The notes beneath the pieces are model-generated. The model did no database searches. It worked only from the letters and a program-made list of their open reading frames with translations, and was not told the DNA's origin. Below are positions 4,019-6,481 of a DNA stretch of 64,000 bases, piece after piece. Each line of letters starts with the position of its first letter. The first letter of the stretch is position 1. Location of the stretch: positions 124,001-188,000 of the IMG/VR virus record IMGVR_UViG_3300049793_000366, one strand, 5' to 3'. Position numbers and translations under genes: made by a program.

Positions 4019-4082
4019 GTGCCTGACTGATAAACTATTATATCTACCCTTGGCACCAAAAATGTCAAGGGTTTTTTATTTT
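4019..4082 (+). promoter_or_regulatory. Transcription attenuator (antiterminator and terminator)
   Basis: Terminator stem ACCCTTGGCA 4046-4055 / TGTCAAGGGT 4063-4072 plus T-tract; GTGCC 4019-4023 is complementary to GGCAC 4052-4056 in the stem. Confidence 0.75.
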
Positions 4083-4102: not shown

Positions 4103-5368
4103 ATGAAAGAAGAAAAATATATCGCAGTAATGTTTCCTTACCCATCTGGTAGCGGATTGCACATAGGTCACTTTTATAACTATGCTATAATCGATTCATA
4201 TTGTCGTTATTGGCGATATAAGGGAGTTAATGTATTTCAGCCATTTGGTTATGATTCATTTGGCTTGCCTGCTGAGAATTACGCGAAGAAAGTAGGTCGA
4301 GATCCTAAAGATGTTACATATGAAAACATCGAGAGGTTCAGAGCGCAAATGGATAAGATGGACACTCAATATGAAGAGAAGTTGATAACATCTGACCCTT
4401 CTTACCAGAAATGGACTCAGTGGTTGTTCACTAAATTGAAAGAACACGGTTTGGTTTATAAAGCTAAAGGGGATGTGAATTACTGCCCTTCTTGTGAGAC
4501 AGTATTGGCTCGTGAACAGGTTAAGAATGATAAGTGTGATAGATGTTCATCTGTTGTTGAAACCAGAAGCTTGGAGCAGTGGTATTTTAAGATAACTGCT
4601 TATAAAGACCGTTTGATTAAAAACTTGGATAAGATTGATTATCCACAAAGTACGATTAATGCTCAAAGAGCTTGGTTGGAGAATTTGCACGATTGGTGTG
4701 TTTCAAGACAACGTAGTTGGGGTTGCCCTATTCCAATAGAGGGTGAAACTGATACATTGGACACATTTGTAGATTCATCATTCTATTATATCAGATATTG
4801 CGACCCATATAATGACAACGAAATTTGTGCTAAAGATAAGTACAAACAAGTTGATGTTTATGTAGGTGGTAATGAACACGCTTGTATGCATTTGATTTAC
4901 GCGAGGTTCATCAATATGTTCTTGTATGATATTGGTGTTGTCTCAGAAGAAGAACCATTTAAAAGAGTAATACATCAAGGTATGATTTTGAACAATGGTG
5001 CTAAAATGGCTAAATCGACTGGTAATGTTATTAATCCAGATGATTATAACTCTGATGAATTGAAATTTTATTTGATGTTCATTGGTCACTATTTCGATGG
5101 TGGTTCTTGGTCTGACCAAAACATATCTGGTATTAAACGCTTTGTCAATAGATTTAAAGAATGGATGTCGAGAGAGGGTGATGAAACGATTGACTTGGTT
5201 AAGTTTAAAGAAACTGTATTTGGTTATACAGAAGCTTTTAAATTCAATAAGGTTGTTAGTGAATTCATGGTGTTGGTAAATCAGAACAGAACTAAAAATA
5301 TCACAAAGGAATGTAAGAAGGAGATTGTTGATATTATTAAGATTTATATGCCATCAATAGAGGTATAA
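4103..5368 (+). CDS. leuS: Minimal leucyl-tRNA synthetase lacking the CP1 editing domain, with reduced C-terminus
   Basis: MFPYPSG..LHIGH, GYDSFGLPAEN, CPSC/CDRC zinc knuckle, QWYFKIT, DWCVSRQRSWGCPIP, DTLDTFVDSSFY, YVGGNEHACMHL, KMAKS. Confidence 0.92.
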   Translation: MKEEKYIAVMFPYPSGSGLHIGHFYNYAIIDSYCRYWRYKGVNVFQPFGYDSFGLPAENYAKKVGRDPKDVTYENIERFRAQMDKMDTQYEEKLITSDPSYQKWTQWLFTKLKEHGLVYKAKGDVNYCPSCETVLAREQVKNDKCDRCSSVVETRSLEQWYFKITAYKDRLIKNLDKIDYPQSTINAQRAWLENLHDWCVSRQRSWGCPIPIEGETDTLDTFVDSSFYYIRYCDPYNDNEICAKDKYKQVDVYVGGNEHACMHLIYARFINMFLYDIGVVSEEEPFKRVIHQGMILNNGAKMAKSTGNVINPDDYNSDELKFYLMFIGHYFDGGSWSDQNISGIKRFVNRFKEWMSREGDETIDLVKFKETVFGYTEAFKFNKVVSEFMVLVNQNRTKNITKECKKEIVDIIKIYMPSIEV

Positions 5369-5370
5369 GA

Positions 5371-5398
5371 AAAAACCCACTCAATTGAGTGGGTTTTT
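5371..5398. terminator. Bidirectional intrinsic terminator
   Basis: AAAAACCCACTC-AATT-GAGTGGGTTTTT between convergent genes. Confidence 0.8.
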
Positions 5399-5400
5399 AA

Positions 5401-5586
5401 TTAAGCTTCAGTTTTCTTAGCCTGTACATCATTTCTAACTTCTTTAAGAAGTTTGATTATGTCTTGAGCTTGTTTCCTTACTCGTGTTCCAGCGGCTTTA
5501 TTACCTTTAATAAAAGTCTTTTCATAGTCTTCTTTTAATGAAGATACAAGTTCAACAAGCTTGTCGTACTTATCTAAGTTATCCAT
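5401..5586 (-). CDS. Histone H1-like (Hc1-family) small DNA-binding protein
   Basis: KGNKAAGTRVRK motif typical of Bacteroidota Hc1-like proteins. Confidence 0.75.
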   Translation of the reverse strand: MDNLDKYDKLVELVSSLKEDYEKTFIKGNKAAGTRVRKQAQDIIKLLKEVRNDVQAKKTEA

Positions 5587-5641: not shown

Positions 5642-6481
5642 TTAATAGTAATTAACAACTAAAATTTCTTGCGAATCACCAACGTTTTTGCGTCTTGCTA
5701 CTTTTTCGTAGTCATAACTAAGGTTCATTACAGTGTATTTCGATAATCTTTCCATAAAAGGATTTGGTACACCTTTGTGTATTGAAACACCACTAAAGGC
5801 GAATCTGATACCTCGTGCGTCTAAATCATCAATTGTGTCGTATAGTTGATTCTCTAATTCCTTTGACCAGAAAGCATTATAACCAGCTTCCGTTCCAATA
5901 TAAGGTGGGTCAAAATAAACAAAGTCATTCTTTTTTGGCGGGTTTATAGCCAAGAGGTCAACAAATGATAAATTGGTGAATTCAATATTTTTAGTGCTAA
6001 GTGCGTGACAGTATTTACGAATTTTTTGTATAGTGCTTTCATTGATGGCTCTTTTCCCCCATGTCTGGTTGAATTCAAATTTTTTATTAAATCGCATAAG
6101 ATTATTTGTACAAGAAGAAACCAACGAGAAAAATTGATACGGATCTTTAGTCTGATTGAATTCTGCCCTTAATTTAACGAATTCTTCTTGTGAGTCTTTA
6201 TCGATTTTAGATTCTAATATTTTCAATATTTCATCTTCAACAGTTTTTGTTTGTCCTGCCCTTTGTAGATTAATATAGAATTCTATTAGTGGTGTGATGA
6301 TATCATTTGCTATAACCTTGTCGTAGCAACAATTTATACTAACGGCTAAACCACCAGCAAATAAATCATAGAATTTATCAACCCCATTTGGATGAGGAAA
6401 GATAGTTAATAACTGGTTCATAAGTCTATCTTTAGAACCAGTATAATTTGTAGGTGGCTTAAGAAATCCTTGACTTATCAT
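5642..6481 (-). CDS. dam: Dam-like (D12 class) DNA adenine methyltransferase
   Basis: NYTGSK, YDLFAGG (motif I), FVYFDPPY (motif IV), EILVVNY C-terminus. Confidence 0.88.
   Translation of the reverse strand: MISQGFLKPPTNYTGSKDRLMNQLLTIFPHPNGVDKFYDLFAGGLAVSINCCYDKVIANDIITPLIEFYINLQRAGQTKTVEDEILKILESKIDKDSQEEFVKLRAEFNQTKDPYQFFSLVSSCTNNLMRFNKKFEFNQTWGKRAINESTIQKIRKYCHALSTKNIEFTNLSFVDLLAINPPKKNDFVYFDPPYIGTEAGYNAFWSKELENQLYDTIDDLDARGIRFAFSGVSIHKGVPNPFMERLSKYTVMNLSYDYEKVARRKNVGDSQEILVVNYY

What the first reader, a model, noticed from the sequence alone, without database searches (positions are those of the whole stretch)
4103..5368. Naturally minimised 421-aa LeuRS lacking editing (CP1) and other insertion domains
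Seen: AQRAWL runs directly into ENLHDWCVSRQ (the CP1 editing domain is missing), GCPIPI runs directly into EGETDTLDTF (the following insertion is missing), there is no leucine-specific insertion before KMAKS, and the C-terminus is short. It is roughly half the size of bacterial LeuRS but keeps HIGH, KMSKS-like and zinc motifs. Known: CP1-less LeuRS occurs in Mycoplasma mobile and is error-prone. Inference: this could be an error-tolerant emergency synthetase, a specialist for phage tRNAs or tRNA-like RNAs, or an enzyme with a non-canonical product.
Basis: partly seen in the sequence, partly recalled or inferred. Interest (0 to 1): 0.72.

Follow-up and report, generated by a model that had tools for sequence, protein, structure and literature searches.

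The report
Half-size leucyl-tRNA synthetase of huge phages
A 508-kb soil phage encodes an intact, strongly conserved leucyl-tRNA synthetase cut down to 421 residues (no proofreading domain, no C-terminal tRNA-binding domain). It belongs to a large phage-only family often found beside phage tRNA-Leu genes, so it is probably a working but proofreading-free enzyme for phage translation.

Summary
Window 4103..5368 (+) is an intact 421-aa ORF: ATG start, TAA stop, then a hairpin terminator.

- **Identity.** It is clearly a bacterial-type LeuRS (TIGR00396 E 2.9e-117; T. thermophilus LeuRS E 4.6e-87).
- **What is kept.** HIGH, KMAKS, the four-Cys knuckle and the residues aligned to the leucine pocket.
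- **What is missing.** The N-terminal ~30 aa, CP1 editing domain, the ~55-aa insertion after "PIP", the leucine-specific domain, the end of the helical domain and the whole C-terminal domain.
- **Fold.** AlphaFold2 gives pLDDT 93.5. The best PDB match is the CP1-less Mycoplasma mobile LeuRS (TM 0.91).
- **Not a decaying gene.** More than 120 protein clusters and 36 IMG/VR loci keep 408-442 aa. 35 of 36 are intact, and dN/dS is 0.04-0.10.
- **Distribution.** Members lie on phage contigs up to 780 kb. None was found in 185,579 cellular species genomes.
- **Not a split enzyme.** No missing domain is encoded elsewhere in the genome.
- **Link to tRNA-Leu.** In 7 distinct related phage lineages the gene lies next to tRNA-Leu arrays.
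- **Genome context.** The genome carries about 15 synthetase-like genes. ValRS, ThrRS and ProRS also lack editing domains.

Most likely it is an active, proofreading-free LeuRS serving phage translation. The main doubt is the missing C-terminal domain, which E. coli and Thermus LeuRS need for charging. I rate it a new variant of a known kind.

The parts
4103..5368 (+). Complete gene for the 421-aa minimised LeuRS (ATG to TAA)
4130..4171 (+). M10-F-P-Y13 (aligned to the Thermus leucine-pocket residues M40-Y43) through the HIGH signature H20-I-G-H23
   Evidence: Alignment to 1H3N. H20 is invariant and M10, F11, P12, Y13, G22, H23 are at least 90% conserved among 80 sequences that include full-length LeuRS.
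4484..4546 (+). Four-cysteine zinc knuckle (C128, C131, C145, C148), the ZN-1 module of the connective peptide
   Evidence: Aligns to Thermus C159-x2-C ... C176-x2-H. The cysteines are at least 80% conserved in the family.
4679..4684 (+). E193-N194, a two-residue linker at the point where about 190 aa of CP1 editing domain are inserted in canonical LeuRS
   Evidence: Query 193/194 joins Thermus 223 to 418. TIGR00396 positions 222-410 are unmatched. Alignment with full-length LeuRS.
4736..4741 (+). I212-E213, the junction where a ~55-aa insertion is missing (Thermus 437-486, the region with the second Cys cluster; M. mobile 269-314)
4991..5017 (+). N297-N-G-A300 tetrapeptide in place of the leucine-specific domain, followed by the K301-M-A-K-S305 catalytic loop
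   Evidence: Family consensus is N-x-G-E-K-M-S-K-S. M302 and K304 are invariant and K301 at least 90% conserved.
5018..5365 (+). Shortened helical (anticodon-binding-type) domain, residues 306-421. It ends at TIGR00396 position 751 of 843, and there is no C-terminal tRNA-binding domain.
   Evidence: helices 317-326, 341-356, 366-377, 381-395, 402-412; conserved MFIGHYFDGGSWSD and FKFNKVVS.
5370..5399 (.). A-run / 8-bp hairpin / T-run: a two-way terminator shared with the convergent gene at 5401..5586 (-)
   Evidence: Read directly. The consensus scan did not list it.
4046..4082 (+). Terminator-like hairpin plus T-run, 20 nt upstream of the start codon. It separates the gene from the upstream ORFs.

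Best explanation
The gene encodes a catalytically active, proofreading-free leucyl-tRNA synthetase core. A huge (about 0.4-0.8 Mb) phage would make it during infection to activate leucine and load it on tRNA-Leu, chiefly the phage's own tRNA-Leu set. Those tRNAs all carry discriminator base A73, and CCA is added after transcription.

What is shown:
- LeuRS ancestry, and an intact active-site and Zn-knuckle sequence.
- A confident LeuRS-core fold.
- Strong purifying selection and a fixed size across a large phage-only family.
- Absence of the missing domains anywhere else in the genome.
- Repeated position directly beside tRNA-Leu gene arrays.

What is inferred:
- That it still transfers leucine to tRNA using only the catalytic core, the KMSKS loop and the shortened helical domain.
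- That loss of CP1 makes it error-prone (Ile, Met, norvaline).
- That the phage tolerates this, because three other synthetases in the same genome have also lost their editing domains.
For: - Family and fold: TIGR00396 392.9 bits against 150.6 for the next family. Thermus, M. mobile and E. coli LeuRS at E 1e-87 to 1e-75. AF2 pLDDT 93.5 and pTM 0.91. Foldseek: 3ZIU TMq 0.91-0.92, other LeuRS 0.85-0.90, MetRS 0.73.
- Catalytic residues: H20, D51, H259, H263, M302 and K304 are invariant. M10, F11, P12, Y13, G22, H23, E258 and K301 are at least 90% conserved across the mini family plus full-length LeuRS.
- Selection: the 120 best clusters are 407-472 aa at 72-84% identity. There are 36 IMG/VR loci at 57-82% identity; 34 have intact ORFs of 408-442 aa, one has 487 aa, and one is frameshifted. 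Nei-Gojobori dN/dS is 0.04-0.10 for unsaturated pairs.
- tRNA link: tRNA-Leu genes lie within 3 kb in 8 of 36 loci (7 distinct). 31 of 69 flanking tRNAs are Leu, against about 9% genome-wide. A distant 508-aa reduced LeuRS in the 735-kb phage LR756501 also follows five tRNA-Leu genes.
- Genome context: in this genome ProRS, LysRS, SerRS, ThrRS, AsnRS and a Gln-type enzyme each follow their cognate tRNA genes.
- Precedent: M. mobile LeuRS lacks CP1 and the leucine-specific domain yet charges tRNA at kcat about 2 per s. A Gly-containing tetrapeptide can replace the leucine-specific domain in E. coli LeuRS (PMC3643597).
- Not split: no second LeuRS piece, CP1 domain or C-terminal domain in the 508-kb genome.
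Against: - Deleting the C-terminal domain abolishes aminoacylation in E. coli and T. thermophilus LeuRS (PMC3561953). This protein lacks that domain, part of the helical domain and the N-terminal ~30 aa.
- No compensating feature was found. Family median pI is 6.2 against 5.7 for cellular LeuRS, and the C-terminal part has pI 5.4. There is no conserved neighbouring gene.
- The score is below the curated LeuRS cut-off (393 against 548 bits).
- In this particular genome the gene lies 190 kb from the tRNA-Leu cluster.
- No transcript, protein or activity data exist: no RNA run was listed, and the protein-tRNA complex prediction was not run by the tool.
Confidence: 0.6

Rival explanations
1. Orthogonal-pair specialist. 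The mini-LeuRS charges only, or mainly, the phage's own unusual tRNA-Leu species, including the 73-77-nt ones with a 4-5-nt variable loop. The host LeuRS, which reads the elbow and long arm through its C-terminal domain, handles these poorly. Phage leucine decoding is thereby insulated from the host.
For: - Three of five tRNA-Leu genes in this genome have class-I shape. All have A73 and score 52-55 bits on the Rfam tRNA model.
- Such short tRNA-Leu genes recur next to the mini-LeuRS in L019, L021, L040 and L045, and next to the 508-aa form in LR756501.
- The enzyme lacks exactly the domain reported to contact the elbow and long variable arm (PMC3561953 abstract).
Against: - Two complete relatives with the mini-LeuRS (G003, G004) showed only 80-88-nt tRNA-Leu genes in the tRNA-rich regions fetched.
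- From my own recall of the literature, E. coli LeuRS does not need the variable arm, so host LeuRS might charge the short tRNAs anyway.
- No test of charging was possible.
Confidence: 0.2
2. An adenylate-forming enzyme with another acceptor or a required partner. It activates leucine but passes it to something other than free tRNA-Leu (a small molecule, a protein, a modified nucleic acid). Alternatively it needs an unlinked phage or host protein to hold the tRNA.
For: - The tRNA-holding C-terminal domain is absent and the helical domain is shortened.
- C-terminal deletion kills charging in model LeuRSs.
- CP1-less LeuRS-like paralogues also exist in Cyanobacteria and Actinomycetota, where a housekeeping LeuRS is present too.
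Against: - The conserved DW-x2-SRQR-x-WG and KMSKS regions and the stem-contact and helical region are kept under strong selection.
- The position beside tRNA-Leu arrays points to tRNA.
- No conserved neighbour could be a partner or acceptor.
Confidence: 0.12
3. A non-catalytic pseudo-synthetase (a leucine or tRNA-Leu sensor, decoy or regulator), like HisZ or the non-charging LeuRS-I of Sulfolobaceae.
For: - Duplicated and reduced synthetases often take on such roles. LeuRS-I binds tRNA and makes adenylate but does not charge (PMC9437257).
- The score is below the curated LeuRS cut-off.
Against: - All catalytic signatures (HIGH, KMSKS lysines, D51, E258/H259/H263) are invariant or nearly so across the family. 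Pure binders usually lose them.
- The gene belongs to a set of about 15 synthetase-like genes arranged with cognate tRNAs.
Confidence: 0.06

Closest known systems
Mycoplasma mobile LeuRS (PDB 3ZIU), the natural CP1-less 'minimal' LeuRS
   Same: - Best structural match (TMq 0.91-0.92) and E 3.9e-82 by sequence.
- CP1 is replaced by a short linker.
- The leucine-specific domain is replaced by a Gly-containing tetrapeptide just before KMSKS (GKDG there, NNGA here).
- Same PYPSGSGLH-x-GH start.
   Different: - M. mobile keeps the N-terminal ~30 aa, the ~45-aa insertion after the P-x-P motif (269-314), the full helical domain and the C-terminal domain. The PDB chain has 637 residues against 421 here.
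- It is a cell's only LeuRS, whereas this is an auxiliary phage gene.
- The CP1 linker is 9 aa there and 2 aa here.
- The phage family forms its own clade. M. mobile itself was not in the tree.
Canonical bacterial LeuRS (T. thermophilus 1H3N, E. coli 4AQ7; TIGR00396)
   Same: - Rossmann core, HIGH, KMSKS, ZN-1 knuckle, the residues aligned to the leucine pocket, the SRQR-x-WG motif, and the first helices after KMSKS.
- 46-52% identity over the first 190 residues to many bacterial LeuRSs.
   Different: TIGR00396 positions 1-23, 222-410, 429-483, 571-603 and 752-843 are missing. Hence there is no post-transfer editing site and no elbow-binding C-terminal domain. The score of 393 bits is below the 548-bit cut-off.
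508/503-aa reduced LeuRS of the 735-kb phage LR756501 (and P0270)
   Same: - Phage-encoded, CP1-less, no leucine-specific domain (KKDG linker).
- Ends at the same point of the helical domain (profile position about 749).
- Lies directly downstream of five tRNA-Leu genes, two of them short.
   Different: - Only 34% identical.
- Keeps the ~50-aa Cys-containing insertion but has no ZN-1 cysteines, the opposite pattern to this protein.
- Passes the LeuRS cut-off (558 bits).
- Placed elsewhere in the tree. The one-clade test is borderline (AU p 0.048).
Phage aminoacyl-tRNA synthetases reported for huge phages (Al-Shayeb et al. 2020, PMC7162821)
   Same: That paper reports up to 15 synthetases and up to 67 tRNAs per genome in huge phages. 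All five of its genomes over 634 kb fall in the Mahaphage clade and were predicted to infect Bacteroidetes. The closest public relative of this gene (81.7% identity) lies in LR745206.1, an unannotated 634,780-bp 'uncultured phage' record. That this record is one of those genomes is my inference from its length.
   Different: The paper's main text does not describe domain loss, and I did not read its supplements. I found no paper in the searchable library that describes a ~420-aa LeuRS or a general lack of editing domains in phage synthetases.
Designed LeuRS urzyme 'LeuAC' and monomeric minimal MetRS (for example A. aeolicus 2CSX)
   Same: The domain order after reduction matches a minimal MetRS: Rossmann fold, Zn knuckle, KMSKS, short helical domain. 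One unbroken Pfam tRNA-synt_1g (MetRS) match covers residues 6-340. Urzyme work asks how little of a LeuRS still works.
   Different: The urzyme is an engineered ~130-aa excerpt, whereas this is a natural, selected 421-aa protein. MetRS is a different specificity, at 96 bits against 296 for LeuRS.

Membership tests
Bacterial-type leucyl-tRNA synthetase (TIGR00396, EC 6.1.1.4) | Class I Rossmann core with HIGH and KMSKS signatures | tested here: met
   H20-I-G-H23 and K301-M-A-K-S305. H20, M302 and K304 are invariant and G22, H23 and K301 at least 90% conserved.
Bacterial-type leucyl-tRNA synthetase (TIGR00396, EC 6.1.1.4) | Whole-protein score at or above the curated equivalog cut-off | tested here: not met
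   392.9 bits against a cut-off of 548.4, in 4 stretches. It is still the best family by about 240 bits. The shortfall comes from about 400 absent profile positions.
Bacterial-type leucyl-tRNA synthetase (TIGR00396, EC 6.1.1.4) | Leucine-pocket residues (Thermus M40, F41, Y43, D80, F501, S504, Y507, H541, H545; their roles are recalled from the structure literature) | tested here: met
   They align to M10, F11, Y13, D51, F222, S225, Y228, H259, H263. Most are invariant or at least 90% conserved. F222 was not on that list.
Bacterial-type leucyl-tRNA synthetase (TIGR00396, EC 6.1.1.4) | LeuRS core fold | tested here: met
   AF2 pLDDT 93.5. TMq is 0.85-0.92 to solved LeuRS structures, and the first non-LeuRS entry (MetRS, TMq 0.73) appears only at rank 48.
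Bacterial-type leucyl-tRNA synthetase (TIGR00396, EC 6.1.1.4) | CP1 editing domain with the T-rich motif and conserved Asp | tested here: not met
   Replaced by E193-N194. No free-standing PF13603 domain in the genome.
Bacterial-type leucyl-tRNA synthetase (TIGR00396, EC 6.1.1.4) | C-terminal tRNA-elbow-binding domain | tested here: not met
   The match ends at profile position 751 of 843. No separate piece is present in the genome.
Bacterial-type leucyl-tRNA synthetase (TIGR00396, EC 6.1.1.4) | Leucylation of tRNA-Leu | not testable with these tools
   Only indirect evidence: position beside tRNA-Leu arrays. Complex prediction did not fold protein with RNA.
M. mobile-type CP1-less minimal LeuRS | CP1 replaced by a short peptide linker; leucine-specific domain replaced by a flexible Gly-containing tetrapeptide | tested here: met
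   EN linker and NNGA (family consensus N-x-G-E), against KEEIDGKIT and GKDG in M. mobile.
M. mobile-type CP1-less minimal LeuRS | Retains the insertion after the P-x-P motif, the full helical domain and the C-terminal domain | tested here: not met
   M. mobile residues 269-314, and about 170 residues beyond the last aligned position, have no counterpart here.
Huge-phage translation gene set (Al-Shayeb 2020) | Encoded on a phage genome over 200 kb, together with many tRNAs and other synthetases | tested here: met
   508-kb virus record, 97% complete, with 61 tRNAs plus a tmRNA and about 15 synthetase-like genes. Relatives lie on contigs of 369-780 kb.
Pseudo-synthetases (HisZ, Sulfolobaceae LeuRS-I type) | Loss or degeneration of catalytic signatures, or of tRNA charging | tested here: not met
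   The signatures are intact and under purifying selection. Charging itself is untested.

The most novel reading that the evidence does not exclude
Mahaphage-type huge phages run a largely proofreading-free, self-contained decoding system. Stripped synthetase cores (LeuRS 421 aa, ValRS 509, ThrRS 346, ProRS 368) are paired with phage tRNAs whose shapes are uncoupled from the bacterial rules: class-I-shaped tRNA-Leu, and long-armed tRNA-Asn, Thr and Lys. On this reading the mini-LeuRS is the smallest natural LeuRS able to charge a full tRNA without a C-terminal domain. Together with the short tRNA-Leu it would form a natural orthogonal pair.
Probability: 0.2. Interest if true: 0.85.

Novelty: new variant of a known kind. 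Interest (0 to 1): 0.62.

Why it matters
If active, this would be by far the smallest natural LeuRS. It is about 200 residues shorter than the M. mobile enzyme and lacks the C-terminal domain that model LeuRSs need. That would show how little of a class Ia synthetase is required to charge a tRNA, which bears on work on synthetase evolution and minimal 'urzymes'.

It would also offer compact, possibly orthogonal LeuRS/tRNA-Leu pairs for genetic-code engineering. Editing domains are missing from four synthetases in one phage genome, which suggests that huge phages accept lower translational accuracy during infection. That idea is testable.

If it is inactive in charging, a very large, strongly conserved phage family of LeuRS cores would need another function.

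Tried and rejected
- **Split enzyme.** Searched the whole 508-kb genome for the LeuRS editing domain (PF13603), Anticodon_1 and the full LeuRS profile. Only IleRS, ValRS and this gene match. Rejected.
- **Decaying gene.** 35 of 36 IMG/VR copies are intact and dN/dS is 0.04-0.10. One copy (L050) is frameshifted near residue 233. Rejected.
- **Another class Ia enzyme.** ValRS, IleRS and MetRS profiles score at most 151 bits against 393 for LeuRS. Rejected.
- **Read-through of the stop.** The stop is TAA, followed by a terminator and a convergent gene. The genome has a CUA suppressor tRNA, but the gene has no in-frame TAG. Rejected.
- **Conserved partner gene.** No neighbour is shared by more than 9 of 37 loci.
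- **Charge compensation for the lost tRNA-binding domain.** Not seen (pI values).
- **Protein-tRNA complex prediction.** The tool did not fold it, so it gives no evidence either way.
- **Expression.** Only one soil DNA run holds the region, and no RNA run was listed.
- **Bacterial donor.** The mini clade sits on a long stem with weakly supported neighbours (a Peribacteria LeuRS and two CP1-less phage-like proteins). No Bacteroidota sequence was among the 80 closest loci. Donor unresolved.
- **Origin of the short tRNA-Leu genes.** Pairwise identities to other tRNAs in the genome are all about 70% and tell nothing.
- **Nucleotide search.** Megablast of 20 kb of the window against GenBank phages found no match.
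- **RNA genes in the window.** No tRNA or Rfam family was found.
Full report
**What is in the window**

Positions 4103..5368 on the + strand hold a 421-codon ORF that starts with ATG and ends with TAA. An in-frame stop lies six codons before the ATG, giving a 427-aa open frame, so the N-terminus cannot be longer. Directly after the stop comes an A-run, an 8-bp hairpin and a T-run (5370-5399, read). This terminator faces a convergent gene. A terminator-like hairpin also lies 20 nt upstream (4046-4082). The gene is therefore a clean, self-contained unit.

**What it is**

The best family by far is bacterial LeuRS. TIGR00396 gives E 2.9e-117 and 392.9 bits, while ValRS, IleRS and MetRS profiles reach at most 151 bits. 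The score stays under the curated cut-off of 548 bits because large parts of the profile have no counterpart.

Against solved structures the best matches are T. thermophilus LeuRS (E 4.6e-87), M. mobile LeuRS (3.9e-82) and the N. gonorrhoeae and E. coli LeuRSs. Residue-level alignments show five deletions relative to canonical LeuRS:

- The first ~30 residues are absent. Query residue 4 aligns to Thermus residue 34.
- The CP1 editing domain (Thermus 224-417, profile 222-410) is replaced by E193-N194.
- The ~55-aa insertion after the P-I-P motif (Thermus 437-486, profile 429-483) is gone.
- The leucine-specific domain (profile 571-603) is replaced by N297-N-G-A300.
- The protein stops at profile position 751 of 843. 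The end of the helical domain and the entire C-terminal domain are therefore missing.

What remains is the catalytic machinery:

- M10-F-P-Y13, D51, F222, S225, Y228, E258, H259 and H263. These align to the Thermus leucine and adenylate pocket. The residue roles are recalled from the structure literature; the alignment is.
- HIGH (residues 20-23) and KMAKS (301-305).
- A C-x2-C ... C-x2-C knuckle (residues 128-148).

In an 80-sequence alignment that includes full-length LeuRSs, H20, D51, H259, H263, M302 and K304 are invariant, and most of the others are at least 90% conserved.

AlphaFold2 folds the protein with pLDDT 93.5 and pTM 0.91. Foldseek puts M. mobile LeuRS first (TMq 0.91-0.92), then other bacterial LeuRSs (0.85-0.90). 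MetRS reaches 0.73.

**Where it comes from**

The window is bases 124,001-188,000 of a 507,910-bp virus record judged 97% complete. The DNA is held by a soil metagenome run. The genome carries 61 tRNA genes and a tmRNA.

The closest GenBank relative of the protein (81.7% identity, same length) lies in LR745206.1, an uncultured phage of 634,780 bp. Al-Shayeb et al. state that all of their genomes over 634 kb fall in the 'Mahaphage' clade and are predicted to infect Bacteroidetes (PMC7162821). I infer, but did not test, that LR745206.1 is one of those genomes and that this phage has a similar host.

**A large, selected, phage-only family**

- A word-indexed search found thousands of related proteins. 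The 120 best clusters are 72-84% identical and 407-472 aa long, on contigs up to 780 kb.
- IMG/VR holds 36 loci at 57-82% identity. Of these, 34 have intact ORFs of 408-442 aa, one has 487 aa, and one (L050) is frameshifted.
- Pairwise Nei-Gojobori dN/dS is 0.04-0.10 where dS is not saturated.
- In 185,579 species-representative cellular genomes, nothing closer than ordinary full-length LeuRS was found. The best full-coverage hit is a 587-aa CP1-less paralogue in Calothrix at 35% identity.
- ESM Atlas clusters nearest the query are 95-97% viral.
- In a maximum-likelihood tree the mini proteins form one clade (SH-aLRT 100) on a long stem. Their weakly supported neighbours are a Peribacteria LeuRS and two CP1-less proteins of 569 and 580 aa; the one I looked up (P0125) lies on a phage-like marine contig.
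- Other CP1-less forms are scattered over the tree, so CP1 has been lost many times.
- One clade member, P0122 (530 aa), still has a ~110-aa CP1 remnant with both editing motifs, TTKPET and GTG...D-x2-D.

**Not a split enzyme**

The genome has no free-standing LeuRS editing domain, no other LeuRS fragment and no extra helical domain.

**Link to tRNA-Leu**

In 8 of the 36 related loci (7 distinct), tRNA-Leu genes lie within 3 kb of the gene, usually directly upstream on the same strand. Of the 69 flanking tRNAs, 31 are Leu, against about 9% of all tRNAs in five genomes.

The 735-kb phage LR756501 has a distant (34%) 508-aa LeuRS. It is also CP1-less, lacks the leucine-specific domain, and is cut at the same point of the helical domain. 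It sits just downstream of five tRNA-Leu genes. Whether that form shares the truncation by descent is unclear (AU p 0.048 against one clade).

In the present genome the LeuRS gene is 190 kb from the tRNA-Leu cluster. Six other synthetase genes, however, follow their cognate tRNA genes directly: Pro, Lys, Ser, Thr, Asn and a Gln-type enzyme. The cassette logic therefore holds for this genome too.

**A genome-wide pattern**

The phage encodes about 15 synthetase-like genes.

- ValRS (509 aa) lacks CP1.
- ThrRS (346 aa) matches only profile positions 218-562, so it lacks the N-terminal editing region.
- ProRS (368 aa) lacks the inserted editing domain.
- Only IleRS (742 aa) keeps CP1.

The loss of proofreading in LeuRS is thus part of a general trend in this genome.

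**How it most likely works**

I think it is an active LeuRS core that makes Leu-AMP and transfers leucine to A73-bearing tRNA-Leu without proofreading. It would serve phage protein synthesis late in infection.

The M. mobile enzyme shows that neither CP1 nor the leucine-specific domain is needed for charging. A Gly-containing tetrapeptide before KMSKS is enough to replace the leucine-specific domain (PMC3643597).

The weak point is the C-terminal domain. Its deletion abolishes charging in E. coli and Thermus LeuRS (PMC3561953). I found neither extra positive charge nor a conserved partner gene that might compensate. The tool for complexes did not fold the protein with RNA, and no RNA-seq run was listed. 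Activity is therefore inferred, at about 60% confidence.

**Rivals**

- A specialist for the phage's class-I-shaped tRNA-Leu (0.2).
- An adenylate-forming enzyme with another acceptor, or one that needs a partner (0.12).
- A non-catalytic sensor or decoy (0.06).

**Novelty**

Synthetases in huge phages are known, and a CP1-less LeuRS is known from M. mobile. I found no paper in the searchable library describing this ~420-aa architecture, its family, or the general lack of editing domains in a phage synthetase set. I rate it a new variant of a known kind, of real interest to people who study synthetase evolution, translational fidelity and phage takeover of translation.

Noticed in passing
L002:1465-2994 (ValRS), L158:1-1038 (ThrRS), L160:1-1104 (ProRS), L001:1426-3654 (IleRS); all in G000, outside the window: Three more synthetases of the same phage lack their editing domains: ValRS is 509 aa without CP1, ThrRS is 346 aa (profile 218-562 only), and ProRS is 368 aa without the inserted domain. 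IleRS (742 aa) keeps CP1. The genome has about 15 synthetase-like genes in all and no MetRS.
   Followed up: partly
L054:580-1840 (G000:C1:320079-321339); also G000:C1:320589-320678, 321700-321784, 409015-409099: tRNA shapes are 'class-swapped'. Three tRNA-Leu genes (74-77 nt) have only a 4-5-nt variable loop. tRNA-Asn (90 nt), tRNA-Thr (85 nt) and tRNA-Lys (85 nt) have stem-loop variable arms, and tRNA-Met and tRNA-Gly (83 nt) have 11-12-nt variable loops. Short tRNA-Leu genes recur in related phages (L019, L021, L040, L045, L166) but were not seen in G003 or G004. Only 2 of 61 tRNA genes encode CCA.
   Followed up: partly
G000:C1:388279-425260: There is a 'translation island' in which synthetase genes directly follow their cognate tRNA genes: ProRS after tRNA-Pro, LysRS after tRNA-Lys, SerRS after tRNA-Ser, and a Gln-type enzyme after four tRNA-Gln. 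ThrRS and AsnRS follow the 320-kb tRNA cluster.
   Followed up: partly
L156:2488-4080 (protein P0122): A 530-aa member nested inside the mini-LeuRS clade keeps a ~110-aa miniature CP1 with both editing motifs (TTKPET and GTGYVMGVPNDDKRD). It sits next to a GIY-YIG homing-endonuclease gene. It may be an intermediate in the reduction, or a very small editing domain.
   Followed up: partly
L166:1620-4512 (LR756501.1, 735-kb phage): Five tRNA-Leu genes (two of 74-75 nt) are followed, after a 256-aa ORF, by a 508-aa CP1-less, C-terminal-domain-less LeuRS. That protein has no ZN-1 cysteines but keeps the Cys-containing insertion, the opposite pattern to the window's protein.
   Followed up: yes
L075:2829-4770 (Calothrix anomala FACHB-343 contig77): A cyanobacterial genome carries a 587-aa CP1-less LeuRS paralogue. 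ESM Atlas also shows CP1-less LeuRS-like clusters that are mostly cyanobacterial (632 aa) or actinobacterial (510 aa). CP1-less LeuRS is therefore much more widespread than M. mobile.
   Followed up: no
G000:C1:121630-121702 and G000:C1:59956-60348 (-): An amber-suppressor-type tRNA (anticodon CUA) lies 2.3 kb before the window, and there is a phage tmRNA gene (tag AKSKTTATQVEELEIA). I did not test whether TAG is recoded in this genome. The LeuRS gene has no in-frame TAG.
   Followed up: no
window 5642-6481 (-): The 279-aa ORF downstream, on the opposite strand, contains a D-P-P-Y motif typical of N6-adenine DNA methyltransferases. This was judged by eye from the translation only.
   Followed up: no
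L050:3001-4262: One of the 36 IMG/VR copies of the mini-LeuRS gene is frameshifted near residue 233. This could be an assembly error or a rare pseudogene.
   Followed up: partly
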